DNA of 52,132 nucleotides. Source: Octopus bimaculoides. Taxonomy: Eukaryota. Position 1 is the first letter of the stretch. The number at the start of each line of letters is the position of its first letter. Made by a program: the position numbers and the translations under genes. Positions 12,650 through 51,960 of this stretch are shown here, piece after piece. The stretch covers positions 180,459,835 through 180,511,966 of the forward strand of contig NC_068981.1 in the NCBI RefSeq assembly GCF_001194135.2. The letters run 5' to 3'. The notes under the pieces were generated by a model. The model was given only the letters and a program-made list of their open reading frames with translations, made no database searches and was not told where the DNA came from.

Positions 12650-12939
12650 AAGCCTAGCCAGGCTCATGGGCCCGGTTTCCCGGTTTCTATGGCGTATGTG
12701 TTCCCCCCAGCTGGACGGGACGCCAGTCCATCGCAGCGTTACTCAAGAAACAGGAAGAAAGGGTGAGAGAAAGTTGGGGCGAAAAAGTACAACAGGGGTC
12801 ACCACCACCTCCTGCCGGAGCCTCGTGAAGCTTTAGGTGTTTTCACTCAATAAACACACACAACGCCCGGTCTGGGAATCGAAACCGCGATCCTTCGACC
12901 GCGAGTCCGCTGCCCTAACCACTGGGCCATTGCGCCTCC
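12650..12939 (-). mobile_element. tRNA-derived SINE, family 2 head (ggaggcgcaatggcccagtggttagggcagcggactcgcgg)
   Basis: tRNA-like head with A/B boxes followed by a non-tRNA body. Same head as 14976. Confidence 0.85.
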
Positions 12940-12951
12940 ACACACATACAT

Positions 12952-14940: not shown

Positions 14941-14972
<32 letters not shown>

Positions 14973-14975
14973 GTA

Positions 14976-15350
14976 GAGGCGCAATGACCCAGTGGTTAGG
15001 GCAGCGGACTCGCGGTCATAGGATCGCGGTTTCGATTCCCTTACCAGGCGTTGTGAGTGTTTATTGAGCGAAAACACCTAAAAGCTCCACGAGGCTCCGG
15101 CAGGGGATGGTGGCGAACCCTGCTGTACTCTTTCACCACAACTTTCTCTCACTCTTACTTCCTGTTGTGTCTGTAATTCAGAGAGTCAGCCTTGACACAT
15201 TGTGTCACGTTGAATATCCCCGAGAACTACGTTAAGGGTACATGTGTCCGTGGAGTGCTCAGCCACTTGCACGTTAATTTCACGAGCAGGCTGTTCCGTT
15301 GATCGGATCAACTGGAACCCTCGACGTCGTAAGAGACGGAGTGCCAACAA
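14976..15350 (+). mobile_element. SINE family 2, apparently full length
   Basis: tRNA-like head, body and ggagtgccaacaac tail. Confidence 0.9.
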
Positions 15351-17619: not shown

Positions 17620-18870
17620 ACATTTACTACAATAACGAAATATGAAATGCCTTGTCATCTGTAACACATACAAAGTTATACAGGAAAACGGTAATGAGAT
17701 AGTTAATAGACTTATATCCACAGTAGAAAGATTGAATGGATTAGAAGTGGAAGGAAAGGATAAAAATATCTCTAAACTTTTTTGGATTCCTAAACTGGAT
17801 AAAGTACCTTTTAAAAGTAGATTTATAGCAGGAGCTTGTAACTGTACAAATAAATAGCTATCTATTTTGGTTGATAAAGCTTTAAAGGTAGTTAGAACAT
17901 AGTTTTATAAATATTGTGATAAAATTTATAACAGTTCGGGGATTAATTATTTTGGGAGTGTTATGTCAACTAAGAAATTTTTGGATAGACTGATTAAATG
18001 CAAGAAGGTTAAGAGTATATGTGTACGATTTTTCGAAGCTATATACAAACTTAAATATGTAGAAGAAGGTATTTTTAGTATATTAGATATTATAATAAAG
18101 AATATGTGTATATCTTTAAAGAATGATAGAGGTTTCTTCTCTAATTGTTATAGGGGATATACTAATATAAATAAGAGAAAAATGAAAGTGATGGTTAGTT
18201 TCATTATTCTTTTCTTCTCTAGGCACAAGGCCCAAAATTTGGTGGGAGGGGACTAGTCGATTAGATCTACTCCAGTACGCAACTGGTACTTAATTTATCG
18301 ACCCCGAAAGGATGAAAGGCAAAGTCGACCTCGGCGGAATTTGAACTCAGAACGTAACGGCAGACGAAATACCGCTAAGCATTTCGCCCGACCCGCTAAC
18401 GTTTCTGCCATCTCACCGCCTTATAGTTAGTTTTATTATTAATAATTCGTTTGTTATGTTTGCGGATAGGGTGTTTGAACGGATTAAGGGAATTCCAATG
18501 AATGGCAATTGTAGCCCAGTATTGGTGGAACTTTATCTTTCTTCATGCGAGTTCTTTTTTCTTAGAAACCTATTTGCGAGGAAAAAGCTTGGTTTGCTTA
18601 AACACCTTAATGGATGCTGCAGATACATAGATGATATATTTATACCTAATTATGGTTTCTTTGAATTTTTACTTATAAAAATATACCATAGAGCATTTAA
18701 GGCCACAAGAAATGGTAATAATATAAAGAATATCAATTATTTAGATGTCAATTTAGTAATTAAGGATAATAATGAGATATGTACTGACATTTATAATAAA
18801 ACAGATTTTGGTTTCCAAGTAGCTTCAATGCCATGGTTCAATAGTAGAATTCCTTCTTTTATAGGATAGA
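17620..18870 (+). pseudogene. Penelope-like retroelement reverse transcriptase, decayed
   Basis: LFWIPKLDKVPFKSRFIAG, GIPMNGNCSPVLVELYL, CRYIDD and NYLDV. Broken by stops and interrupted by a SINE. Confidence 0.85.
18208..18422 (-). mobile_element. SINE family 4 inserted in the Penelope RT
   Basis: Reverse complement of the 15368-15580 family. Confidence 0.9.
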
Positions 18871-18998: not shown

Positions 18999-19652
18999 NN
19001 NNNNNNNNNNNNNNNNNNNNNNNNNNNNNNNNNNNNNNNNNNNNNNNNNNNNNNNNNNNNNNNNNNNNNNNNNNNNNNNNNNNNNNNNNNNNNNNNNNNN
19101 NNNNNNNNNNNNNNNNNNNNNNNNNNNNNNNNNNNNNNNNNNNNNNNNNNNNNNNNNNNNNNNNNNNNNNNNNNNNNNNNNNNNNNNNNNNNNNNNNNNN
19201 NNNNNNNNNNNNNNNNNNNNNNNNNNNNNNNNNNNNNNNNNNNNNNNNNNNNNNNNNNNNNNNNNNNNNNNNNNNNNNNNNNNNNNNNNNNNNNNNNNNN
19301 NNNNNNNNNNNNNNNNNNNNNNNNNNNNNNNNNNNNNNNNNNNNNNNNNNNNNNNNNNNNNNNNNNNNNNNNNNNNNNNNNNNNNNNNNNNNNNNNNNNN
19401 NNNNNNNNNNNNNNNNNNNNNNNNNNNNNNNNNNNNNNNNNNNNNNNNNNNNNNNNNNNNNNNNNNNNNNNNNNNNNNNNNNNNNNNNNNNNNNNNNNNN
19501 NNNNNNNNNNNNNNNNNNNNNNNNNNNNNNNNNNNNNNNNNNNNNNNNNNNNNNNNNNNNNNNNNNNNNNNNNNNNNNNNNNNNNNNNNNNNNNNNNNNN
19601 TTAATGTTTTAGAGTGTGCGTTTTTTTCAGATTTATGAACTACTGACGACAA

Positions 19653-19712
<60 letters not shown>

Positions 19713-20554
19713 ACGTATGTATATAAAGGAAAAGAGGAAGAGAGAAATATTCAAAGAGAAGGAATGATAGGTGTAGACCGATAGAGAGTGATAGTGGAAG
19801 GGGGCGAATGGAGAAATTTGATCGTTTCTTGCGCTCGTAAGGTCTAAAAAGCAGCTAAATGGTCAATCGATATAGTGGATATAGCAGCCAAATCCCCATA
19901 TATGACATATGAACATCTGACACAGGAAGGACACATTGGGTAATAATTTCTATGAAAAAAAAACATTCATTAATAATCACAGTCGGAACAATTTTAAAAC
20001 TTGGCCTTTTCATTCCGGGATCGATTTGGGGTGAGCAATAACGAATATAAACTTATTTACTCTTTTGTATGCAAGGAACGCTTCAATTTCATCATAACTC
20101 TCTCTCATTCTCTCCCTCTTACTCCCTTTCTATCGTTCTCCCGCTGTATCTTTCTGTCTACTTTCTATCTAGCCCAAGTGCTTAAAATAGAGTGGACTCC
20201 CCTAGGGTTACCCACGTAGACAGTTTGTAGGTTTCAACCGATCAATGGGGTACATTCACCACACACATAGGCTAGAGTGGACTGGAATTCAAAGAATAGA
20301 AAGATATACACCATGTATTCCGTCCGACGCTCTTGCTGTTCTACTACTCTACGCCCTGAATGAGTATATTTTATCGTCCTTGAAAGTATGTATAATGAGG
20401 CTATACATGTTGCCATTGCAGGCCTTCCGAGATTGGCTATATCATTTATATGAGTGTGCGCGTGTGTGTGTGCCTTTGTGAGTAAGATGTTTGTGCGCGG
20501 AAACGTATCTGTGCATGCATTGGTAAGATGTAATTATTCTGAATATTAGTTTTT

Positions 20555-20770
20555 GGCGGCGGCGAGCTGACAGAATGGTTAGCACGTCGGGCAAAATGCT
20601 TAGCAGCATTTCGTTCATCTTTACGTTCTGAGTTCAAATTCCGCTGAGGTCGACTTTGCCTTTCATCATTTCGAGATGGATAAAATAAGTAGCATTTGAG
20701 CACTGGGGTCGATGTAATCGACTTAACTTCTCCCCGAAATTGCTGGCTTTGTGCCAAAATTTGAAATCAA
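20555..20770 (+). mobile_element. SINE family 4
   Basis: Same head and body as 15368. Confidence 0.85.
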
Positions 20771-21994
20771 TATTAGTATTAATTTAGAAATTAATAACTA
20801 TTGCAGTAAGTTTCAATGATTTCATGAATAAAGATATTTTTGTAGAATTTGTAAAATATTCTATTATGACGTAATTTCAGTCTTAGCTTTTCAACACAGA
20901 AAATTATATGTAGTTAACAGATTTGGTAAATATTTGGGTTTAAATACTCCGTTAGAAAATTTCAATACATTTCAATTATGGCGTCATAACACACTGATTT
21001 CCCTTGCGAATACACGGAACAATTTTACTTTCGTCTTATCGCCTTCAATACTTCAGCAGACACCATCACTGGATTTATAGATAGTCTTGTCTATAATCAA
21101 TATAGCAGTGAAATATTCTGACTGTGTTAAGTAAGCATTTGATTCTACAGTCCGAGAAACAAGCACGCACATACAAACACATATTCTGCTAGTTCGAGGA
21201 TGAGATCATCAGCTGTTGATTAGGATTTCGGATTTTACCCGTTTGTTTATATTGATATGAGGATTCAGATTTGTAGCGCTGATTAGTAAATGTGATATTT
21301 ATATCTACTGACAATGCAATGGGAGAAAGAAAGACATATGAAAAGCGTCGCTTGCGTGCGTGAGATCTTAAAGAAGCATCTATATAGTCAATCGACATGG
21401 TAGACATAGCAACCAAATCTCCATACATCACACCTAAACAACTGAAAACAGAAGGATACATTGGGTAATAAATTTTGTTAAATGAAAAACCTCTATGGAT
21501 TGTCACGGCCGAAATATTTTAACTTTCTGTTCGTCCAAGTCCTACTTTAGGATAAGCAATAACAAATCTACGCTTAGACATTCTTATGGACGCAAGAAAC
21601 GCTTCAATTTCAAAATACCTCTCTTTCCCTATCTCTCTCTCTCTATCTATCTATCTATTTATCTCTATTTATCTATCTATCTTTCTCCCAAGTGTTCTCC
21701 TTTTTTTTTTTTTGTTGCTTCAGTTTGTGTATGCGTGTATATCTGATTGAGTTGATGTGTATGAAGTAAATTACAATGAAACGTAGCAAAATCTTCTTCT
21801 CGTAAAAAATATAACTGGGACGTTCGTAAATAATTTTTAAGATATAGATTTGAGCACAGTTTTTGAGTTTGTCAACTGAGAAGTTGTGTAAAGCCGTTAT
21901 GAATTATAAAACGTAAGAAGGAACGTTGTCGCAAAAAGAACTACTTTTATATCCTTGAATTCCATAAGTTTATTACAAACAGTCCAAACACGTA

Positions 21995-22212
21995 CGAGAG
22001 GGTGTTGAAAAGTTCCTGGCTTTAAGGGTGTCGCGAAAAGTCTGGTTAATGGGCCAACCTTCAGAGTTCTTTTGCAGAGCATAGAAAAACTGAAGGACCG
22101 CTGCGATATAAGTGTGTGAATCTGAGAGAGGAATATGTTAAATAAAATCATAATTAACTGATCCTCCTGTATTTCTTTTTACCTAAAGCCAGAGACTTTT
22201 CAGCACCCCTCG
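21995..22212 (+). mobile_element. Mariner-derived MITE or internal-deletion element
   Basis: TA flanks at 21993-21994 and 22213-22214. TIRs cgagagggtgttgaaaagttcctggcttta and taaagccagagacttttcagcacccctcg. Internal IEKLKDR..KCVNLREEYVK* matches the mariner transposase C-terminus. Confidence 0.85.
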
Positions 22213-22355
22213 TACATTAAATCCAACCAAATACATATATACATACATACATTCATGTTGACAAACATACCTACATATGTATGTCAATACATATAAACAT
22301 ATATACATACACCAAAGGATTATTCAGACCTGATTTTTTTTTTCATTGTTATTAA

Positions 22356-22486
22356 GGCGGAGAGCTGGCAGAATCGTTAGCACGTCGGACGAAATGCTTC
22401 GCAACGTTTCTTCTGTCTTTACGTTTTAAGTTCAAATTCCGCCGAGGTCAACTTTGCTTTTCATCTTTTCGGGGTCGATAAACTAA
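22356..22486 (+). mobile_element. SINE family 4, 3'-truncated
   Basis: Head and central block only, abutting array block A. Confidence 0.8.
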
Positions 22487-23012
22487 GAATTGCAGTAAAT
22501 GTCAACGGTTTCATGAATGAATACATTTTGTATAGTTTGAAAACTATTTCATTGCGACGTTTTTTCAATACACTAAAATTTAAGATAGGTAACGACCGAG
22601 TAAGCGAACGAATGAAAGAGTGATAAAGACGGAGACAGGGACAGAGAGACAGAAAAAAGAGAGAGACACATAGAGAAGGAGAGAAAGGTTCAACGAGACA
22701 GAAAACAGAGGTAGTCCTTCAGACGGAGAGAATGAGAGACAACGAGGTACTATGAAGTTGAAACGAAGCTTCTACATGGTCAACTAATGTAGAAGACATA
22801 GCAGCCTTTGGAAAATGTAGGACATATTGGGTAATAAATGTATTACAAAAAATTCTTGGCCCGTGTGAGTTAGACTTTGTTCTGTCCATCCAGGGTCGAC
22901 ATTGGGATAATAACACTCACACATTGTTATTCACATAAGAAACGTTTCAATTTCATAATACCTCTCTCTGTGCCGCTCTTTCTATCGTTCTTCCGCTGAA
23001 TTTCTCCCTCTT

Positions 23013-23063
<51 letters not shown>

Positions 23064-23369
23064 GTCCGCTTATCTCTCCAGTGTTGTCGATCTTTTGTTG
23101 CTTCTGTGTGTGTATGTGTGTCTATGACGTAAATTAAAATAAAACGCTACAAAAACTTCTTTTTGAAAATTATAGTAACTGTCAGTTGAAACACTAGGAT
23201 TTTCGAGCATTTTTACTCAATTGAAAATTGCGTGAGACGCCTAAGAATTTTCCAAGTGTGAAAATAAACGTTGTCAAAGAAGCATTACATTTATTTGAAT
23301 CCTATAATTTTAATATCAGAAAATGGTCCAAACGCAAAATGAATCTAAATAGATAAACACATACATGCA

Positions 23370-23464
23370 CAAGTGTCTTCTACTATAGCCTCGGGCCGAC
23401 CAAAGCCTTGTGAGTGGATTTGGCAACCGGAAACTGAAAGAAGCCCGTCGTGTGTGTGTGTGTG

Positions 23465-23506
<42 letters not shown>

Positions 23507-23677
23507 CCTGTGTTTGTCCCCCACCATCGCTTGACAACTGATACTGGTGTGTTTACGTCCCCGTAACTTACCGGTTCGGCAAAAGAGACCGATAGAATAA
23601 GTACTAGACTTACAAAGAATGAGTTCTGGGGTCGATTTGTTCGACTAAAGGCGGTGCTCCAGCATGGCCACAGTCAA

Positions 23678-23680
<3 letters not shown>
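23370..23680 (+). mobile_element. SINE family 1, 5'-truncated
   Basis: Starts at caagtgtcttctactatagcc and runs to the ccagcatggccacagtcaaatg tail. Confidence 0.85.
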
Positions 23681-23743
<63 letters not shown>

Positions 23744-23837
23744 ATGTACGCATGCATGTATGTATGTGAACGCGCTTGTGTGTGTGAGTTCAATTAAATT
23801 ATTATTTACTTTTTTCTTATTATTGCTCGCAGCAGCT

Positions 23838-23923
<86 letters not shown>

Positions 23924-24299
23924 TTTATAAGAATTGCAGTATGTATCAATGATTTTATGAATGGAGACATTATTTAGAATTTGTAAAGCATTCGGTTATG
24001 ACGTAGTAGCAAGCCTAATATTTCAATACAGAAAATTTAACGCAGGTAACGAGCGAATGAGCGGGAGATGGGAGAGAGAGAAAGAGAGAGAGAATGAGAG
24101 ACAGAGAATGAGAGACAGAGAATGAGAGAATGAGAGACAGAGAGTGAGATGTGAGGGAAGAGGGGAAGAGACGTATTCTGAAACTGAAGCGTTTCTTGCG
24201 TGCTTAAAATCTAAAAGCGTCTATCTGGTCAATCGATGTAGTTAGACATAACAGCCAAATCACACCTTCAGAAAAGGATATATTCGGTAATAAATTCTT

Positions 24300-24905
24300 T
24301 CTTTCTTTGCTTTTAACCCTCCAATGCAGAGTATAGGTCACTTATAATTGAATTCCATGTCGCATAATTTTTCGCTTCTGTACTTATTCTCTGCTATGAA
24401 TGTCCCCCTTTCTCTAGTTCCTTTTGTGTTGATCTACGCCACGAGTTCTTAGGCCTACCCCTCTTTCTATATCCATCCGGATTCCACTGTAAAGCACTTT
24501 TCACTGCATTTGGTGTGTCCTTTCTAATTTAATTGTACTACCAATCCACTTCCACTTTTTCTTAAATATTTGCTCCCTAATCGAAACTTGATTTGTTCTT
24601 TGCCATAGCTCCATATTGCTTATGTGTTCGGGCCAACAAATTTTAAGTATACTACGCAAGCATCTGTTGATGAATGATTGTATTTGCTTATTTGACTTAA
24701 CTGTTGCTCGCCATGTCTCAGCCCCATAGAATAACACCGCTTTTACGTTAGTGTTAAAAATTCTTATTTTGTTCTTTATTGAAATTACACTTGCGCTCCA
24801 TACATGTGAAAAGCGGTCCTTGCCTTACTTATTCTCGTCTTAATATCTTCGTCGGTACCGCCTGAGAACGTTATCTTACTACCTAAATACGTAAACTCTC
24901 GAATA
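24300..24905 (-). pseudogene. RTE LINE 3' fragment inserted inside an array cassette
   Basis: EFTYLGSKI...DEDIKTRISKARTAF...IRIFNTNVKAVLFYGAETW...FINRCLRSILKICWPEHISN..LWQRT...KKWKWIG. Confidence 0.85.
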
Positions 24906-25379
24906 CTCATAGCCGGAAAATTTTAACTTTGGTCTGTTCATCCATTTTCGACATAGCATAAGCTTTCTAAAGTACGCAAGAAGCCCTTCAATTTCATTAT
25001 AATGCTTATCTTTCTGTATCTTCCTCTTTTTGATTTTCTGTCTATTTGTTCTCCCAACTTACCCTCTCTCTGGATCTTTCCACTTTTTCATTCTCTCTCT
25101 CTCACTCTCTCTCTCTCTCTCTCTCACTCTCTCTCTCTCTCTCTCTCACTCTCACTCTCTATTGCTGTCCCACTAATTTGCCCTCTCACTGAATTTTTTC
25201 ATTCTCTCTCTTTCTCTTCATCTCTTTTTTTATCTCTCCAATGTTATTACAATGAAACGCTACAATAGCTTTCCTTTAAAATTATAGTAACTGCATTACC
25301 ACTATTTGGAATCGATAAAATAAGTACCAATCGAGCCGCTCCCTTAAACTTTCTGGCCTTGTGCCAAAAATTTGAGACC

Positions 25380-25422
<43 letters not shown>

Positions 25423-25585
25423 ATTTTCTTTTGTAAATAATAACTAAGGATTGCAAGAATTTTAAAATTATTTTCTTATGACGTAATTTTAATCTTAGTT
25501 CCTCTATTGAGAAAATTACAAAGAGGTAACAGATTTGATAAATATTCGGGTTTAAAATCTCGATTAAAAATTTTGGTACATTTCT

Positions 25586-25614
25586 ATTATGACGTCATAA
25601 TCGATTGATTTCCC
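25586..25614. promoter_or_regulatory. CRE/ATF-type palindrome plus kB-like half site, representative copy
   Basis: attatgacgtcataat, then atttccc 7 nt after the 14-mer. Motif match only, function untested. Confidence 0.3.
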
Positions 25615-25708
25615 TTATGAATATGCGGAACGTGCTTTGTTTATATGTATAGCATTGAAATATTCCAATGATTACACGATAGGCAAGCATTTGATTTTAC
25701 AGCCCCAT

Positions 25709-25770
<62 letters not shown>

Positions 25771-25904
25771 ACTGCTAGTTCGAGGATGTAGACCATTATC
25801 AGTTCATTGGGATTTGGGATTTTATCGGTTTGTTGACATCGAGATGAGGCTTCGATTTGCAGAGAAGACCTTTTGAGTAGTCGTGATATTAACATCTTAT
25901 GCAA

Positions 25905-39332: not shown

Positions 39333-39819
39333 ATATGTTTGCATGTATGGTATATATGTACATAGGTTGCGTTCTTTGGATGTCTTTGAACCACTTTCTT
39401 GTCTGGTAACAAATACATGAAAGTAGCGTTTCGTTCGGCAACGTCCATTCATATTCTTGAAAAATCATAAACATTTTACACTACTTCTGAATTGAGCGGC
39501 TGAAAATCCTACAAAAATCCAAGTATGCTCGTACACAGAGTGATCAAAATAAGATCGATATCGGCAAATCAAAATATGCCGTAGAAAGAAAGAAAAATTT
39601 AAAGAAAACCTCAGATTTGCTTTTTCATTTGATTATACAATTACTATAATTTTGAAAATGAAGCTATTGTAGTTTCATTGTAGTTCTCTTATTATACGTA
39701 CGTACACATCGACTCAATGACATGCACACGTACACATCCAGAAGCAGCAGAAACTAGATAACACTGGAGTGACAGAGAGAAAGAAAGAGAGATAGAGAGG
39801 GGGAGAGAGGAGGAGAAAG

Positions 39820-39990
39820 AAAGAAAGATAGAAAGAAAGAAAGATAGAAAGAAAGAAAGATAGAAAGAAAGAAAGATAGAAAGAAAGAAAGATAGAAAGA
39901 AAGAAAGATAGAAAGAAAGAAAGATAGAAAGAAAGAAAGATAGAAAGAAAGAAAGATAGAAAGAAAGAAAGATAGAAAGAAAGAAAGAAA
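39820..39990. repeat. (AAAGAAAGATAG)n 12-bp tandem repeat forming the GA tract of an array unit
   Basis: Direct reading. Confidence 0.95.
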
Positions 39991-42214
39991 GATTCAGAGA
40001 GAGTGGAAGTCTATAAGACAAAAAAGATAGAAAGAGAGGTTTTTTTTAAGGGAAGTATAATGAAATTGAAGCGTTCCTTGCCTACATAAGAATGTGTAGT
40101 AGAAGTATAATATCTTTATTGTGGGCATGTAGCCCTAACAAAGAATGGACACCACGAGGACAGACAACACAAAACACGGGTTACATATAACGAATGATGA
40201 ATATGACATGAAATATTTACAATGAAAGGATGAAATGGTTTACAAGTCCCCCAAAGCTCGCAGTTTCATTTAACTGTTCCGTTATACAGTTTATTATCAT
40301 TTTTAGAGTTTCTCATTTGTTATCGATTTTGTTAACTCCTCTATTTCGACGACATTGGGCAGACTTTCGTAACGAACACGCGTGCCTACATCCATCACAC
40401 TACCAGGAAACCATTGTATCATTCTTTCCGTCCGTTCCTTGTCCAGTAATACCGCTTTCACATGTATGTTTACGATTCGGCTGTCTAGCCTTAAATACCC
40501 AGAAATTGGCTCATACGCATGTTTTCTACAAGTGGTCACATGACCTGGTCACGTGATGGTTGAGACCTAGTTTTATACGGGCTATCAAATTCCAACACGT
40601 GACAGACCAGCCTAGCGCAGGAAATTATGTCGGCTAGCTGGAGCCTACCAGATGGGATCCCGGCAAAGATGAGAGTTGCTTTGCAGATAGTCTTAACGCG
40701 CTGTTGTATTCCGTTTGGTCAGCACACATCACCCAGTTCCAACTGCATGAGAAACCATATGCATATTTTCTTCAGACAGTATTATTCAAGGTGTACCAAC
40801 GTTTTCTCTACCGATTAATTTAGCGGTTGAATAAAGTGTAGCAGTCAATTGCAACTCGTTTTCTTGTATTTTTTTCCGCTGGTACCTGACTCATTGGAAC
40901 CAAGAAATTGTAATTATACCCGGGCCAGAGTTACTCTAATCAATTCGCTAAAAATGCATGTGTGTATATTTGTTTTCGTTCATGCCAACGTTGACCTGGA
41001 ATGAAGAGAGCAAAATTTCAATGCGTTCCCGTCATGACTATACATACATACATATATACATGTGCATACACAAGCACACATGCATGCTGGCGCACACACA
41101 TGCGTACAAACAGACAAAAGGAACGCAGCTCCAATAACGGACAGAGTCAACATCCATTGACAAAGTTGTAAAAGCAACGAAAATTTTGGAAGAAAAAATA
41201 TAAATAATTAATGGAAATCGAACCATATTAAGACAATATAATTCTCTCTAGATACAACAAAGTTTGCTTCAACACACGAATTCACATAAAAAACCTGGCA
41301 AACCAGTTAAAAAAACGAAGTAAGAAGGAAGTGTTTTCTAAGTAAAGAGCAAATTTCCTCTACTGGAATTTTGCTGATCATTGCTATGAAGGACTCATGC
41401 AGAACTTTAGAAAAAACTATGTTGCACCAATTTTAACTGAAATGTATATCCTCATGTATACTATTTCAAAAGTCTAAGCAAGCTTAACGTTTCATAAATA
41501 CAATATATCCTTTTTAGGGGACAATATTTATTGCATGTGTTTGCAAGTGTGTATATATATAATCTACGTGTGTATATTTTTATTGATTTATATTAATCCT
41601 TCTCCGAATTTAAGCCCGCTTCAAACAGTGTCAAAGCGTTTTTGTTTATTTGTGAAAGGGTGTATAACTATGTATGTCCGAGTTCATGTGTGCATATACG
41701 TGTGAATATGTAGGTATTTATGACTCGTGTGTGTGTTTGTGTGCTTGTTTTTTATGTAAATATGCATGCATGTATATATATACGTATTTGGTTGGACTCA
41801 ATTTACGTGTTTTGGACCGTTTTCATGTCTGGTCACAAACTTATAGAATTCAAATACATCAAAGTAGTATTTTGTTCGACAATGTTCCTTCTGACACTTT
41901 AAAATTCATAATGGTTTCAAACAATATTGTAATTGAATAACGTCAAAATGTATTAAAATCCACATGTGTGGCTACACAGAGAGCGTTCAAAATAGGGTCG
42001 ATATTTATTAGCAAGACAAAATATGCCTACCGAAGAAAAGATTTACGAAAACATCAGGCTGGTTGTTAGCGTGTTGTAGTTATAATAGCGAGGTAGTAGT
42101 CTCGATTCCTTGAACGGATGGTGCGTTGTGTTGTTGAACAAAATATTTCATCTCACGTTATTCTATACTCACTTCGACATTTCACGATTTGATGGAAGCA
42201 GTGGGCTCAATTCT

Positions 42215-42526
42215 GGCACTCCGTCGATTACGATGATGAAGGTTCCGACTGATCCGATCAACGGAATAGCTTGCTCGTCAAATTAAAGTACAACTGGCTA
42301 CGCACTCCAGAAACACGCGTACCCTTAACGCAGTTTTCAAGGAGGTTCAGCGTGGCACAGTATGACAAGGCTAGCCCTTTGAAATACAGGTACTACTCAT
42401 TTTTGTTAGCAGAGTGGATGGGAGCAAAGAGAAATAAAGTGTCTTTCTCAGGGACACAACGCGCCGCCGGGAATCGAACACACGCCCTACGATCGCAAAC
42501 CGAATACCCTAACCACTAAGCCACGC
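42215..42526 (-). mobile_element. SINE with a family 2 tail, degenerate
   Basis: ggcactccgtcg...gatcaacggaa..gc.tgctcgt is the reverse of the 14976 tail. tRNA-like head at the right end. Confidence 0.75.
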
Positions 42527-42815
42527 AGGGAGTGAGCAAATGTACAGTACAAGCATTTGATCACTATAAACAAATCATCTATGCAGCAAAACCCTCGTCT
42601 GTCGTCTGCGACGAAAGAATCCGACAGTTGCTAATATTTTGAGAGTCCACCGGTTACTATAATTTTGAAATCTGAGCTATTGTAGCGTTTCATTGCAATT
42701 CACTTCGTATATATACGCATACATATCGATTCAATCGCATACACACAGGCGCACACGCTGAAGTGAAAGGAAAAGATCAACACTGGAAAGATAAAGAGAA
42801 ATAGACAGACAGACA

Positions 42816-42896
<81 letters not shown>

Positions 42897-44903
42897 AAAT
42901 TGATTCAGATTCAAAGAGTGGGTAAGTCAGCGAGACAACGATAGATAGAGGTAGAAGGAGAGAAGTATAATGAAACTGAAGCGTTTCTTACGTGCGTAAG
43001 GATGCGTAACTCGACCTCGGATGAACAGGCCAAAGGTTAAATGCACCCCGACCGTGACATCCATGGATGTTTCTTTGAAGCATTTATTATCCAATGTGTC
43101 CTTTTTTTAGATGGTAATGTGTGATATACGGAAATTTGGTTTACTATGTCTATTTTGTCGACTAACCATATAGAAAGAAGGCTTCTCTTTGGGTCTTAGC
43201 ACACGCAAGAAATACTTCAATCTGATACATCTCTGTCTCACACTCAATCGCTCTACCTTTCTCTTTCTCCCTCTTTCTATCTCCTGCTCCCTCTTTCTCT
43301 CTCTTTCTCTCCCTCTCTCTGCTAATATATGCATGTATGTATGTATGTATAGATAGATACATACATACATACATACATACATACATACATACACATATAT
43401 TGAAGTGTTGTCCTTTATGAATGACAATGACTCTGCGTCTAAGAATGTGAGTGGATGCATGCGTGTGTGCGCGCGCGTGGAGAATCAAATGTTTACCTAT
43501 CAAACAGCCATTGGAATAGTTCAATAGTTCAATGCTATACTGATTATGGACAAAGCTATTTATAAATCGAAGTATTTAAGGTGAGATGACAGCAAAATCG
43601 TCGCGCATATTTTACAAGGAAAATCAGTTCTTGGACCCGATTTTTGATGTCTTTTGAACATATGTGACCACCAAAACCATCGGCAATTACTCGTTCGTAA
43701 CCCTAGCTCGAAGTGTATCGGGGATATTGGTAAAAATATACCGGAAAGTTACCCGTATCAGACTAACATGTGAACCTGTTGCACACATCTATATATATGC
43801 AACAGACAACATAATTAAACAGAATGAATTAACTATTATACCCGTCTCACTTTGACGCTAAAATGTATACATCATATGGTTTTGATGTGTCATGAATACA
43901 TTTATCAAAACCGTCAAAATTAGGTCGTTCTTTAGGTAAACGATACTTTCAAAGTAATACTAACATATTAACCCGCAAAATGTTTCCGACATCAATCAAC
44001 GATGAGATTGACCTAATGAGCGCAGTTGGTTAACAAAGACGATACAGACTAACTCTATAACTCTACATCTAATGCTAAAACATACAAATATGTTCATGAT
44101 TCTAGATAAGAGTATGTGCAGTTGTTCCTCTGTGTATGTGTGTGTGTGTGTTTGTTCGTGTGTGTGTTTGTTCGTGTGTGGAGCGATGTCTATGCGTGTG
44201 TGTGTAGAATCAAATGTTTATCTGTCATACAGTGATGGGAATATTTCAGGGCTATAAATTCGATGTCTTTTGAAAGATCGATGATTTGAAGACGATAGTA
44301 AAATCGCGCCGCGTATTTAAAAGGGAAATTTGTCTATTATGACGTCATAACGGAAATATAACGAAATTTTCAAACGAAATATTTAAAGCAAAATATTAAC
44401 CAAATATGTTACCTGTCTTTAATATTCTATATAGAAAAACTATGGCTGAACATACGACATACAAAAATATTTTTCATATTCTACAAAATGTTTTCATTCC
44501 TGGAATCATATAAACTTACTGCAATCCTTAGTTATTTACAAAACAAAACTACTATTAACTACTACTAACAATAATGATTAAGTAGTCCATTATTCACTCA
44601 CACGTTACTTCTCACCATTTATAATTCATAATGGCTTGACACAGCATTTTAACTGATCTGCTCAAAAATGTTCTAAGATTCAAGTGTGAGGGTACACATG
44701 GACGGAGCAAAATATAGCCAATATGGGAAAATCAGACCAGTCTACTTCTAAAAAAATTGCGTGAGAACCTAAGATTTATTTTTTTAAGTGAGTCTACAGT
44801 TACTATAATTTTGAAAGAGAAGCTATTGCAGCATTTCATTGTAGTTCGCTTGGTGTCCTTAATGGTCAGTGACGCTCATTCCTCGTTCACGAGTGAACAG
44901 TCA

Positions 44904-44963
<60 letters not shown>

Positions 44964-45748
44964 ATACATCCCCACATGCGTGTATATACGCATTTAACTA
45001 GATTCATTTCATGTGTCTGGACCGTTCTCTTGTCTTGTAACAGACATATAGAGATCAAATGTATAAAAAAAAAGTAACGTTTCGTCTGACAATGTTCCTT
45101 CTCACCATTTATAATTCATAAAGATTTTACGCAAGATTTTAATTGATTTGCTCATAAATGTACCAAAATCCACATGTCTCTGTCTTCGCAGAAAATATTT
45201 GAGGAAACTGCAGACTTGTGATTATACGGTTGCTATGAATTTGGAAGAGACACTGTTGTCACATTTCACAGTAATTCCTTTTATACATATAAATATTCAT
45301 CGACTTAATGACATACACACACATGCATACGCAAAAGTAACAGAGATACAGAATATACGAAAAGAGATAAGAGAGATATAGAGAGGGTGAATTAGAAAAT
45401 GAGAAAGATTCAGAGAGATTTGAAGAACAATAAGATAGGCAGAGAGAGAGAGAGAGAGAGAGAAAGAGAAGTTTAATGAAATTTAAGTATTTCTAACGTA
45501 TAATCGAACGCTTAATCATATATTTGTTATTGTTCACCCCAAAGTCGAGCCTGGATGAACATAACGAAGTTTTAAATCATTCAGACTATCCAAGGATGTT
45601 TTTGTTTTTTACAGAATAGTCTTTATTATCCAACACGTACCACGTTTGTCAGGTGGTAAGGCGTGATGTGTATTTGGATGTTTTTCTACTACATCGATCG
45701 GACATCCACAAGTTTCTTTTTAGGTTTTCCGAGCGCAAGAAACGCACC

Positions 45749-45790
<42 letters not shown>

Positions 45791-46564
45791 TCTCCCTCTC
45801 TCCCTCCCTCTCTCTCTCTCCCTCTCTCTCTCCCTCTCCCTCTCTCCCTCTCTCTCTCTCCCTCTCTATCTCTCTCTCCCTCTCTCTCTCTCCCTCTCTC
45901 TCCCCCCTCTCTCTCTCTCTCCTTCTTTATGTTGACCTTTTTCTGCGCAGTTCATCTAGGAACCTCTTTACTGAAGAAAAGAAAAACTTATCTAAACTAA
46001 TCCCCTACAATTAAAATTTAGAAATTTTAACTAATACATCAGTCGCATTTTGAAGAGGTAATTCATGTTTTTCCTTCGGAGTTTTGATTGTGTTTTTAAC
46101 GAATGTGACCATCAAAACAGTCGGAAATTATTCGTTCGTAACTCGAAGTGCGAATGTGACAGGTGTATTGGTAAAAATATACCGGGTAATTACCCATATC
46201 AGGTTAGACCCTGAACATGCTGCACGCGTCCATATATATGCTACAGGGAACAGAATTAAACAGAATGAATTTGCTGTTGTACCCGTCTCACTTTCATGCT
46301 AAAATCTATAAATCTTATGATCTTGATTGCATCTAGCTATCAAAATCGTCAAAAGAAAACTCATTCCCAAGGTAAACTATACTTTCAAAGTAACACGGGT
46401 GTAATACTAAAAAATTAACATTATAAAATGTTTCCAATATCAATGAACGATGAGATCGACCTCAAAGATGAAGTTTGTTAACAAGGACAATACATTCTGA
46501 TTCTATATCTAATGCTAAAACATATAAATATGTATATTGATTCTAAATCTAAGAATATGGTGAG

Positions 46565-46868
46565 GACGAGACGCCCTCGGTCATAAATGACCATGGAATT
46601 GTACCTAGGAAGTTCCCCTCCAAAGCACAAGTCTGGGCAAGGTTGTTTATAAAAGACCAGCAGTCGCCAGTGCATACTAGCCTCCCTTCTCCACGCCACC
46701 ACTGTTATCCAAAGGAAAGGCAACTCATTTCTACAGCTGAGTGAACTGGAGCAATGTGAAATAAAGTATATTGCTCAAGAACACAACACACAGCCTGATC
46801 TGGGAATCGAACTTACAACCTCATGACTGTGAGCCCGACGTCCTAACCACTGAGCCATGCACCTTCAC
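46565..46868 (-). mobile_element. SINE family 3
   Basis: gggaatcgaac B box and cctaaccactgagcc A box. Homologous to 13715-14018. Confidence 0.75.
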
Positions 46869-47043
46869 ACAAGGGAGGGAAAGTTTATAGGTGTGTAAAT
46901 CAAATGCTTACCTGACATACAGCCGTTTGGATATTTCAATGCTACACCTATAAACAAAGCTCTTTACTGAAGTATTGAAGAAATTAAGACGACGGGGAAA
47001 TCAATCTCTTATGACGTCATAATAGCACAAAATAATTGTTCGG

Positions 47044-47076
47044 CTGATGAGGGGAAATAACCCGGAAATCGCGATA
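47044..47076 (+). ncRNA. Degenerate minimal hammerhead-like motif, probably Penelope-derived
   Basis: CUGAUGA-gggg aaauaa cccg-GAAA-U-CGCG-A-UA. Stem II has one mismatch and stem I is poorly paired. Confidence 0.3.
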
Positions 47077-48712
47077 CGCAGATATTGGTGTGAGCTGAGT
47101 GGGGGTGCTAGATTCCCTTGTTCGAAAATGTAAGGACACAGATCGTGTCGTATAGCCAGCTGGAGACGATGTCTCCTGGGGCTAAATTGCAGCAACATTC
47201 GTCCTAGACCGGGACTGCCATGTTATATTGGCAAACAATCTTTACTACAAAGTACTGTTGCTGAATATCTCACGTTGTGAGATTTAAAAATAGTAATTTT
47301 CTAAGTGCATACATGTTCGCAACATGAAACTTGACCCACTGCTCATTCTATTCGGATTGAGAAAAAACACATATACTGATGGCATCTTTGACTTGCTAAT
47401 ATTATTAGCAAAATTTTTTTATATACAAAAGCAAAGTGGCAAAAGACACTCTCAACTTCAAACATTTTAGAAACTTTGTGCACGACAGATATCTAATTGA
47501 AAAAAACATCATACAATGAAAAAAAGCAAGATGAATTTTGTGAAAAAAAAAAATGGAGGCTCTACCTTGAGTTTGTAAACACATGGTAGTCCTCTAGTGT
47601 TCTTGTAGAGATGTATTAAGATTTTATGAGTGATTGACGATTTGAGTCTGTTTTATTTTCTGTTTTAGTCTGTTTTATATTCTTCTATTTATTTTTTATT
47701 CATCCGGTTCTCTCTCTTCTTTTTATTTGTTTCTTCTTTTATTTATTAGTATTTTTTCATTCTTTCTCTTTTTCTTTCTCTTAAAAAAAAGTCCTGTTCT
47801 CCATTTGTTTTATACAAAACTTCACGGTCCCCTGGCCGTACTGTTTCATATTATAATAGGGAAAACTGGATATAAAAAGTTAATATTGTAGAGACTTTCT
47901 TCACTCTCTCAACCTCTCTCTTTCTCATCTTTCTCTCTCTCCTCTTCCTCTTTATCTCTCTCTCTTCTTCTTCTTCTTCTTCTTCTTCTTCTTCTTCTTC
48001 TTCTTCTTCTTCTTCTTCTTCTCTCTCACTCTCTCCCTCACTCTGCTGCTGTTGTGGCTTTGAATACAAGTCAACTTTACGCNNNNNNNNNNNNNNNNNN
48101 NNNNNNNNNNNNNNNNNNNNNNNNNNNNNNNNNNNNNNNNNNNNNNNNNNNNNNNNNNNNNNNNNNNNNNNNNNNNNNNNNNNNNNNNNNNNNNNNNNNN
48201 NNNNNNNNNNNNNNNNNNNNNNNNNNNNNNNNNNNNNNNNNNNNNNNNNNNNNNNNNNNNNNNNNNNNNNNNNNNNNNNNNNNNNNNNNNNNNNNNNNNN
48301 NNNNNNNNNNNNNNNNNNNNNNNNNNNNNNNNNNNNNNNNNNNNNNNNNNNNNNNNNNNNNNNNNNNNNNNNNNNNNNNNNNNNNNNNNNNNNNNNNNNN
48401 NNNNNNNNNNNNNNNNNNNNNNNNNNNNNNNNNNNNNNNNNNNNNNNNNNNNNNNNNNNNNNNNNNNNNNNNNNNNNNNNNNNNNNNNNNNNNNNNNNNN
48501 NNNNNNNNNNNNNNNNNNNNNNNNNNNNNNNNNNNNNNNNNNNNNNNNNNNNNNNNNNNNNNNNNNNNNNNNNNNNNNNNNNNNNNNNNNNNNNNNNNNN
48601 NNNNNNNNNNNNNNNNNNNNNNNNNNNNNNNNNNNNNNNNNNNNNNNNNNNNNNNNNNNNNNNNNNNNNNNNNNNNNNNNNNNNNNNNNNNNNNNNNNNN
48701 NNNNNNNNNNNN

Positions 48713-51442: not shown

Positions 51443-51960
51443 ATAAGGTTCTGGGAAGCACATGTGAAGTTGGTCTTAATTGAGAATTTTTCTCCTTGCT
51501 GGAATGTGAATTCCAAGCCTTCAGTTAGGTATGGGAATGTACCACAATTAGGTCGTCTGCATTTTTTAACTGTTGGTATCGTATGTATTGAGTATGGTTT
51601 TGCATTTGTTAGGAGTCTCTTGAGTGATTTGTGTTGTCTTTTGCATTTGAGGAGTTTATGTGTATTTAGGATGTTGTTCATGTTCGGGTCTTGAGTGAAC
51701 AGAGGGAGATTTTGTATAATTGTGTTGTATGCTTCATTGTTTCTGGGGTTGTGGGTAGATATGTATGGGAGTGATTTAAAGTGAGATATGGTGTTTTGTT
51801 TTGCTGTCCATAGTGTATTTGTGTCCAATTACTTGGCACGTTCAATTCCATGGTCTATAAGTGCTGGTGGGTATTGACGTTCAATGAGTGACATTTTGAG
51901 GTCTTGTAGGCGAGGTTCCCGAGTGGTTGTGTCAGATACAATTGTATAAGATCCTTTTAG
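51443..51960 (-). pseudogene. Penelope-like element, RT-to-GIY-YIG linker region running into a gap
   Basis: LPYISTHNPRN...KCKRQHKSLKRLLT...KKCRRPNCGTFPYL..G..F.F..G..F.IKTNFTCASQNL is the Cys-rich linker that precedes GIY-YIG in PLEs. Confidence 0.8.

What the first reader, a model, noticed from the sequence alone, without database searches (positions are those of the whole stretch)
19740..47025. Hidden 27-kb array of about 12 diverged copies of a modular non-coding unit
Seen: under the SINE, LINE and microsatellite clutter the same blocks recur in the same order (A, B, C, D or H, GA tract, inverted-repeat cassette, CT tract, G) every 1.5-4 kb. Copies differ by many substitutions and indels and carry different nested TEs, so the expansion looks old. 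I found no reading frame shared by all copies. Inference: it may be a battery of regulatory or ncRNA units, the intergenic skeleton of a tandem gene cluster whose exons are lost or sit in gaps, or a tandemly amplified non-autonomous transposon. It does not match a satellite or TE family I can name.
Basis: partly seen in the sequence, partly recalled or inferred. Interest (0 to 1): 0.75.

Follow-up and report, generated by a model that had tools for sequence, protein, structure and literature searches.

The report
Old decayed tandem repeat array in octopus
A 27-kb stretch of octopus DNA holds about 12 worn-down copies of one 1.5-2 kb non-coding segment, most likely the neutral relic of an old local duplication burst and not a working gene or RNA cluster.

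Summary
The repeat array is real. Three blocks recur in a fixed order only between about 19.7 and 47.0 kb:
- F4, about 420 bp: GA tract, 36-bp inverted-repeat arm, spacer, second arm, CT tract.
- G, about 290 bp.
- F3, about 540 bp.

There are 12 unit remnants. The first six lie on the + strand and the last six on the - strand. The flip falls exactly at assembly gap 34789-35210, so it is either a real inversion or a misoriented contig.

The signs point to old, neutral decay:
- Units are only 62-67% identical to each other, less than the SINEs nested in them (73%).
- They share no reading frame and match no Rfam family.
- Decay is almost uniform along the unit.
- The inverted-repeat arms are no more complementary within a copy than between copies.

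Neighbouring units share junctions and a shared extra block, which shows DNA-level tandem duplication and not separate insertions.

The blocks are absent from about 83 kb of other octopus DNA. This is too small a sample to rule out a mid-copy dispersed family.

Genome-wide copy number, transcription and gap closure were therefore not tested.

Verdict: an ordinary, old, degenerate macrosatellite-like array of modest interest.

The parts
19731..21338 (+). Unit U1. F4 19731-20161, MID (SINE-like dispersed repeat) 20167-20473, SINE F1 20554-20780, full-length F3 20762-21338. No G block.
21319..22594 (+). Unit U2. F4 21319-21687, G 21700-21998, SINE F1 22351-22490, F3 truncated at model position 157 at 22481-22594.
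22654..24051 (+). Unit U3. F4 22654-23036, G 23081-23339, nested F2 repeat 23371-23675, (GTA)n, then F3 at 23906-24051 truncated at the same point as in U2. The junction to the next F4 is homologous to the U2/U3 junction.
24096..25918 (+). Unit U4. F4 is split into 24096-24304 and 24891-25085 by a LINE 3' fragment (DUF6451 ORF 24504-24824, - strand). G fragment 25246-25380, SINE fragment 25302-25390, F3 25392-25918.
26809..28594 (+). Unit U5. F4 26809-27234, G 27297-27457, SINE fragment 27474-27527, MID fragment 27651-27745, F3 28084-28594.
29140..29711 (.). Assembly gap between U5 (after F3) and U6 (before F4). Same strand and expected unit phase on both sides.
30050..34788 (+). Unit U6. F4 left half 30050-30287 and right half 31532-31641 are split by an insertion holding two SINEs (30927-31284, - strand). 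Both 33-34 nt arms still match the consensus perfectly. G 31769-31970, gap 32584-33411, two F2 repeats 33568-34429, then F3 34441-34788 cut by the next gap.
34789..35210 (.). Assembly gap at which unit orientation switches from + to -. Either a real inversion breakpoint or a misoriented contig.
35650..36608 (-). Unit remnant M6. F3 35650-35912, G fragment 36525-36608.
37641..40152 (-). Unit M5. F3 37641-37937, MID 38002-38319, G 39375-39764, F4 right-arm fragment 39978-40152. A young 16-bp tandem (AGAAAGAAAGAAAGAT)x11 at 39814-39992 abuts the F4 fragment.
40949..43299 (-). Unit M4 and partial neighbours. F4 interior fragment 40949-41047, G 41803-42064, G 42587-42783, complete F4 42895-43299.
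43431..44116 (-). Remnant M3. F3 fragment 43431-43660, followed by block H 43639-44116. H is non-coding and is duplicated at 46079-46553 at 75% identity.
44126..45828 (-). Unit M2. F3 44126-44563, G fragment 44569-44860, G 45007-45353, complete F4 45394-45828.
46079..47027 (-). Remnant M1. Block H 46079-46553, a tRNA-like SINE fragment at about 46575-46846, and an F3 fragment at 46775-47027, which is the right end of the array.
36873..37352 (-). Nested Mos1-type mariner transposase N-terminal fragment (HTH_48, E = 3e-19). Not part of the unit.

Best explanation
This is the relic of an old local tandem amplification. One non-coding segment of about 1.5-2 kb was copied head to tail, about a dozen times, in a few closely spaced rounds. 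The copying happened at the DNA level, by unequal exchange or replication slippage. The segment consisted of a 420-bp foldback module F4, block G, block F3, and in some units block H.

Half of the array was then inverted, or is misoriented in the assembly. After that the copies decayed independently and apparently neutrally. They lost pieces and acquired SINEs, a LINE tail, a mariner fragment and microsatellites.

Shown: the array exists, the block order is fixed, neighbouring units share junctions, the divergence is deep and almost uniform, and there is no shared coding frame or known RNA signature.

Inferred: the mechanism of amplification, the neutrality, and the absence of a present function.
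For: - Blocks occur only inside 19.7-47.0 kb and always in the same unit order.
- The U2/U3 and U3/U4 junctions are homologous: F3 is cut at the same position and followed by the same ...AGGTAACGA(C/G)CGA...GA-tract sequence.
- The F3-H arrangement is shared by neighbours M1 and M2. H is 75% identical between them, the highest value of any block. Duplication therefore copied junctions, as unequal exchange does and independent insertion does not.
- Six + remnants followed by six - remnants with a single switch has a probability of about 0.006 under random orientation (own arithmetic, 24/4096).
- Mean pairwise identity is 0.62 for F4, 0.64 for G and 0.67 for F3, against 0.73 for the nested SINE F1 and repeat F2.
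- Identity matrices are star-like, with no neighbour effect and no +/- clades. This fits one early burst followed by long independent decay.
- Conservation along the unit is flat apart from one 24-nt stretch.
- Arm complementarity is 0.62 within copies against 0.60 between copies, p = 0.24.
- Folding z-scores of two of the copies are +1.35 and -1.0.
- There is no Rfam family and no shared ORF.
- F3, F4 and G give no real hit in 62 kb of an unrelated O. bimaculoides chromosome locus or in the 21 kb of window flanks. SINE F1 gives 27 hits there and F2 many.
Against: - Genome-wide copy number is unknown. Absence from about 83 kb only bounds the background density to below about 1 copy per 28 kb, which still allows tens of thousands of copies genome-wide.
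- A star-like tree and a foldback module with 36-bp arms also fit a transposon burst.
- The right arm of the inverted repeat (AGAAACGCTTCAATTTCATTATAC) is more conserved than the permutation null allows: 0.883 against a 99% limit of 0.867.
- The strand flip may be an assembly error.
Confidence: 0.6

Rival explanations
1. The unit, or its F4 core, is a non-autonomous DNA transposon of foldback/MITE or rolling-circle type. It multiplies into tandem arrays by its own mechanism and is also dispersed elsewhere in the genome. This locus would then be one dense nest of an old family.
For: - F4 is a long inverted repeat with about 36-bp core arms that continue into complementary GA/CT tracts. The core is bordered by TA on both sides, which is Tc1/mariner-like.
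- All copies are about equally diverged, as after a family burst.
- Both orientations occur.
- Molluscan Helentron derivatives are known to carry and spread tandem repeats (PMC7492417).
Against: - There are no F3, F4 or G copies in about 83 kb of other octopus DNA, where the SINEs are abundant.
- Units abut directly and share junctions and deletions with their neighbours.
- Orientation is not random: there is one switch, and it sits at a gap.
- No target-site duplications or element ends could be defined for the whole unit. The TA borders simply continue the palindrome.
- Known Helentron-carried repeats, to my recollection (monomer size not read in the cited paper), have monomers in the 100-200 bp range, not 1.5-2 kb.
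Confidence: 0.2
2. The array is a working battery of regulatory or non-coding RNA units. For example, F3 with its TTATGACGTCATAA palindrome acts as a promoter or enhancer, F4 is transcribed into a hairpin that yields small RNAs, or the array is a piRNA-type cluster.
For: - The F3 motif contains the palindrome TGACGTCA, which from general knowledge is a CRE/ATF-type site. It is intact in 5 of the 11 F3 copies; 14 of the 23 pattern matches allowing one mismatch are near-intact sites in F3.
- The right arm of F4 is conserved above a permutation null.
- Unit U6 keeps both arms perfect over 33-34 nt.
- Transcription was never tested.
Against: - Motif enrichment is just what the copy number of F3 predicts.
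- Conservation is otherwise flat.
- The arms do not co-vary.
- Two of the copies fold no better than shuffles.
- No Rfam family matches.
- Many units have lost F3, G or half of F4.
Confidence: 0.1
3. It is the intergenic skeleton of a tandem gene cluster whose exons are lost or hidden in the gaps.
For: Old tandem duplicates that escape homogenisation are typical of gene clusters, and three gaps (1.8 kb in total) are unread.
Against: - No frame is open across copies of any block.
- Among ORFs of 40 or more residues, the ten most protein-like were scanned against Pfam and only transposon domains were found.
- The gaps are too small and too few to hide one exon per unit in 12 units.
Confidence: 0.03
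4. The array, or part of it, is an assembly artefact caused by mis-scaffolding of repeat-rich contigs.
For: The window has 12 N gaps, and the only strand switch falls exactly on one of them.
Against: Units differ by 30-40% and carry different nested insertions, so they cannot be collapsed or duplicated reads of one copy. Units U1 to U5 lie on one uninterrupted contig, 19601-29139. Only the orientation and order of the contigs is open to this objection.
Confidence: 0.05

Closest known systems
Macrosatellites and old tandem segmental duplications (kb-sized units repeated at one locus, such as D4Z4 or DXZ4 in human; own knowledge)
   Same: A kb-sized non-coding unit is repeated head to tail about a dozen times at one locus. 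Unit-to-unit junctions are homologous, and growth was by local duplication of neighbouring units.
   Different: Classic macrosatellites are kept above 90% identical by concerted evolution and often vary in copy number. Here the units are only 62-67% identical, riddled with insertions, and half are inverted. This is a fossil array, not an active one.
Foldback / MITE-type non-autonomous DNA transposons
   Same: The F4 module is a 420-bp inverted repeat with 36-bp core arms, extended by simple-sequence arms (GA/CT) around a 170-230-bp spacer.
   Different: The inverted repeat is an internal module of a larger unit and not its ends. No target-site duplications and no dispersed copies were seen, and the arms have decayed.
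Cg_HINE: Helentron non-autonomous elements carrying satDNA-like tandem repeats in the Pacific oyster (PMC7492417)
   Same: In a mollusc genome, tandem repeats sit inside a modular non-coding element.
   Different: The oyster elements are reported as genome-wide (abstract); from my recollection (not read in the paper), their repeats are short monomers of roughly 100-200 bp lying between defined flanks. Here the unit is 1.5-2 kb, no Helitron-type ends were identified, and no second locus is known.
Penelope-like element / retrozyme tandem arrangements with hammerhead ribozymes (own knowledge)
   Same: A tandem arrangement. Possible Penelope-like ORF fragments lie just outside both ends of the array, at 18456-18869 (+) and 51450-51828 (-).
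   Different: No hammerhead ribozyme was detected even at E<=10. The units have no similarity to those ORF fragments.

Membership tests
Macrosatellite / tandem segmental duplication | A kb-sized unit repeated head to tail at one locus | tested here: met
   There are 12 unit remnants with the fixed block order F4-G-(MID)-F3 between 19731 and 47027.
Macrosatellite / tandem segmental duplication | Homologous unit-to-unit junctions, showing duplication at the DNA level | tested here: met
   The U2/U3 and U3/U4 junctions align, with the same F3 truncation point. The F3-H arrangement is shared by neighbours M1 and M2.
Macrosatellite / tandem segmental duplication | High identity between units through concerted evolution | tested here: not met
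   Mean pairwise identity is 0.62-0.67, lower than the 0.73 of the nested SINEs. Neighbours are no more alike than distant units.
Macrosatellite / tandem segmental duplication | Confined to one or a few loci and not dispersed | tested here: inconclusive
   Absent from 21 kb of window flanks and 62 kb of an unrelated O. bimaculoides locus. This sample is far too small for a genome of about 2.7 Gb (own knowledge), and the protein database control showed that it holds no non-coding octopus ORFs.
Foldback / MITE transposon | Terminal inverted repeats | tested here: inconclusive
   F4 has clear 36-bp arms plus GA/CT extensions. They bound only the F4 module, not the repeated unit.
Foldback / MITE transposon | Target-site duplication at each copy, and dispersed copies | tested here: not met
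   The TA next to both arms is part of the palindrome (GTA...TAC). No copies were found outside the array in the DNA available.
Helitron / Helentron-carried tandem repeats | Short satDNA-like monomers between conserved left and right flanks, with Helitron-type ends | tested here: not met
   The unit is 1.5-2 kb, and no flank modules are present at the array edges. Helitron end motifs were not searched for systematically.
Penelope-like element / retrozyme arrays | A hammerhead ribozyme in each repeat | tested here: not met
   No hammerhead family was found at the gathering score, at E<=5 over 18000-48100, or at E<=10 on 46950-47250.
Tandem gene cluster | An exon or ORF shared by the units | tested here: not met
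   Stop codons occur in all six frames in copies of F4 and H. No shared ORF of 40 or more residues was found in any block, F3 and G included. Pfam finds only the transposon domains DUF6451 and HTH_48.
Hairpin-RNA / structured ncRNA cluster | A hairpin maintained in each copy through covariation and stable folding | tested here: not met
   Intra-copy arm pairing is 0.62 against 0.60 between copies, p = 0.24. Folding z-scores are +1.35 and -1.0.
Hairpin-RNA / structured ncRNA cluster | Transcription or small RNAs from the units | not testable with these tools

The most novel reading that the evidence does not exclude
The array is an octopus-lineage locus of repeated promoter-plus-hairpin units. 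F3 would carry CRE-like palindromes and F4 would form a long inverted repeat. The locus would be transcribed into hairpin or piRNA-type small-RNA precursors, or act as a multi-copy enhancer block, with a few intact units (such as U6, with perfect arms) still doing the work while the others decay.
Probability: 0.06. Interest if true: 0.6.

Novelty: new member of a known kind. Interest (0 to 1): 0.25.

Why it matters
If the reading is right, the locus is a well-preserved example of how a cephalopod genome builds a kb-unit tandem array and then erodes it. It contains a useful internal clock: the units are about twice as diverged as the SINE wave that invaded them. It also holds a possible case of repeated SINE insertion at one microsatellite target. 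It matters mostly for repeat annotation, since the unit is probably missing from repeat libraries, and for assembly quality control at the strand flip. It would matter much more only if expression data showed unit-phased RNAs.

Tried and rejected
Read depth, RNA evidence and gap closure could therefore not be obtained, and read laying was not attempted.
- Protein-database route to copy number. A profile of F4-derived ORFs found only the window's own ORF. A control with the abundant SINE ORF also found just one annotated O. bimaculoides protein. The database therefore holds no non-coding octopus ORFs, and the F4 null result says nothing about copy number.
- Third protein search. A search with a possible RT fragment gave one 1.3-kb Logan contig protein, which was of no use for sampling the genome.
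- Contig look-up. The look-up of encoding contigs on the window ORF P0001 found no record.
- Metagenome scan. A scan with the best-conserved 20-mer gave four matches of about 21 nt in contigs that carry no octopus repeats, so they are chance hits.
- Hammerhead-like string. A CTGATGAGGGG...GAAA string at 47044-47075 has no Rfam support and was dropped.
- Six-frame Pfam scan.
- Giant recent palindrome. This idea was rejected: + and - units are no closer to their mirror partners than to any other unit, and the two sides of the central gap are not symmetric.
- Literature. Searches for octopus or cephalopod tandem or satellite repeats found nothing describing this unit.


Full report
**Material.** The window is 52,132 bp at about 37% GC and has 12 N gaps. 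It is octopus DNA. Its SINE family matches 27 times (E down to 3e-64) in a 76-kb locus of Octopus bimaculoides chromosome CM046612.1, which was fetched through an annotated protein partly derived from that SINE. No tRNA and no Rfam family reaches the gathering score anywhere in the window.

**Is the array there?** Yes.
- Self-comparison by BLASTN gave many 66-78% identical matches of several hundred bp.
- Profile searches seeded from the first unit define three array-specific blocks:
  - F4, about 420 bp, 10 copies or fragments.
  - G, about 290 bp, 11 copies or fragments.
  - F3, about 540 bp, 11 copies or fragments.
- A fourth block, H (about 480 bp), is present twice.
- Every hit lies between 19731 and 47027.
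- In a 300-bp tiling scan of the whole window, tiles inside about 19650-47100 typically have 5-12 partners, all inside the region. Flank tiles match nothing, or only microsatellites and dispersed repeats.
Its layout is a GA-rich tract, an arm TATTATGAAATTGAAGCGTTTCTTGCGTGCGTAAGA, a 170-230-bp spacer, the complementary arm, and a CT-rich tract.
- In every unit that retains two or more blocks, the order is F4, G, (MID), F3.

**Corrections to the observation.**
- Orientation. Units U1-U6 (19731-34788) are on the + strand. The six remnants from 35650 to 47027 are on the - strand.
- The switch coincides with gap 34789-35210, which also cuts an F3 copy. A single switch among 12 elements has a chance probability of about 0.006 (24/4096, own arithmetic). 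The arrangement is therefore two oriented runs and not a random nest.
- Whether the flip is a real inversion or a misoriented contig cannot be told without reads.
- The other two gaps (29140-29711 and 32584-33411) have the same strand and the expected block phase on both sides (F3|F4 and G|F3). This is compatible with continuity but does not prove it.
- Only 39% of the 27.5 kb is recognisably unit-derived. A further 14% matches dispersed repeats seen in the flanks or in the unrelated locus, 7% is low complexity, 7% is gaps, and 33% is unassigned or nested insertions.
- Block MID (20167-20473, 38002-38319, 27651-27745) is not array-specific. It also occurs at 6969-7185 and ten times in the unrelated locus, partly overlapping SINE copies there.

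**Coding and RNA content.**
- No frame is open across copies of F4 or H.
- No ORF of 40 or more residues is shared between copies of any block, F3 and G included.
- The protein-like ORFs belong to nested transposons: a LINE 3' end with DUF6451 (24504-24824, -) that splits the F4 of U4, and a Mos1-type mariner N-terminus (36873-37352, -; HTH_48, E = 3e-19).
- A permissive Rfam scan (E<=5) of 18000-48100 returned only sub-threshold microsatellite look-alikes of mir-297/466 and similar families. None was unit-phased and none was a ribozyme.

**Age and mode of evolution.**
- Mean pairwise identity is 0.62 for F4, 0.64 for G and 0.67 for F3, against 0.73 for copies of the nested SINE F1 and repeat F2. 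The units are thus older than the SINE wave.
- The identity matrices are star-like. Neighbours are no more alike than distant units, and + and - units do not form clades. This fits one early burst followed by long independent decay, and it argues against a recent large palindrome.
- The duplication nevertheless acted on DNA segments including their junctions. U2 and U3 share the same F3 truncation (model position about 157), followed by the same ...AGGTAACGA(C/G)CGA... sequence leading into the next GA tract.
- The neighbours M1 and M2 share the F3-H arrangement, and H has the highest identity of any block at 75%.
- Independent transposon insertions would not reproduce junctions in this way.

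**Signs of constraint.**
- In 15-column windows, conservation in F3 and G never exceeds a permutation null.
- F4 has one 24-nt stretch, the right arm AGAAACGCTTCAATTTCATTATAC, just above the 99% limit: 0.883 against 0.867.
- The two arms of a copy pair no better with each other (0.62) than with arms of other copies (0.60; permutation p = 0.24). The hairpin was therefore a property of the ancestral unit and has not been maintained.
- Two of the more complete copies fold no better than dinucleotide shuffles, with z = +1.35 and -1.0.
- The TTATGACGT(C/A)A motif of F3 is enriched in the window (23 found against 4.2 expected), but mostly because F3 is repeated (14 of the 23 matches lie in F3).
The transcription half of that criterion could not be tested.

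**Dispersed or local?**
- F3, F4 and G give no real match in the 21 kb of window flanks or in 62 kb (non-N) of the unrelated O. bimaculoides locus. SINE F1 gives 27 hits there and F2 many.
- The local density of about 0.4 copies per kb is therefore at least ten times any background density. Even so, 83 kb cannot exclude a mid-copy dispersed family.
- The routes that could have settled this were closed or empty:
  - The protein database contains no non-coding octopus ORFs, as the SINE control shows.
  - The third protein search was unproductive.
  - The metagenome scan returned chance 20-mers only.

**Interpretation.**
- The best-supported account is a fossil macrosatellite-like array. A mosaic non-coding segment with a foldback module was amplified locally in a few quick rounds. 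It was perhaps inverted in half, and it then decayed neutrally while collecting transposons and microsatellites (confidence about 0.6).
- The main rival is that the unit or its F4 core belongs to a non-autonomous transposon family that forms tandem arrays, as Helentron derivatives do in oysters (PMC7492417) (about 0.2).
- A functional regulatory or small-RNA battery is not excluded, but every test that could be run counts against it (about 0.1).
- A gene-cluster skeleton (about 0.03) and a pure assembly artefact (about 0.05; only the contig orientation is at risk) are unlikely.

**Verdict.** The functional interpretations are not supported. It is a new example of a known kind of structure and of modest interest.

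Noticed in passing
window 20554-20780, 22351-22490, 25302-25390: A SINE F1 copy sits in the same place and orientation, directly 5' of F3 next to an (ATT/AGT)n tract, in units U1, U2 and U4. The U1 and U2 SINE copies are 83% identical, while the surrounding unit blocks are about 66-71% identical. They are also no closer to each other than to SINEs outside the array. This suggests repeated independent SINE insertion into the same microsatellite target and not inheritance with the unit.
   Followed up: partly
window 18456-18869 (+) and 51450-51828 (-): Two ORF fragments lie just outside the two ends of the array and point towards it. One carries a YIDD-type motif (RYIDDIF). The other carries a Cys-rich stretch that, from memory, resembles the region before the GIY-YIG domain of Penelope-like elements. 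Pfam gave no hit for the first, and its only relative is a 79-aa Logan ORF. The identification as Penelope-like rests on my own recollection.
   Followed up: partly
window 12749-12946 and 14968-15166: A pair of 199-bp inverted repeats, 89% identical and about 2 kb apart, enclosing a SINE copy. This may be the ends of a DNA transposon with long terminal inverted repeats.
   Followed up: no
window 39814-39992: A nearly perfect (99%) tandem of 11 copies of the 16-bp unit AGAAAGAAAGAAAGAT abuts a decayed F4 fragment. It looks like a young microsatellite expansion seeded by the old GA/CT tract.
   Followed up: no
window 6969-7185, 20167-20473, 38002-38319; L001 several sites: The MID block is a dispersed repeat. 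In the unrelated O. bimaculoides locus its hits partly overlap SINE F1 copies on the opposite strand. It may be a second SINE family that shares a core with F1.
   Followed up: partly
window 47044-47075: The string CTGATGAGGGGAAATAACCCGGAAATC, right at the array's edge, resembles a hammerhead ribozyme core. No Rfam hammerhead model matches it even at E<=10, so it is treated as chance.
   Followed up: yes
window 501-605 and 1261-1365: A direct repeat of 105 bp, 88.6% identical and 760 bp apart, in the left flank.
   Followed up: no
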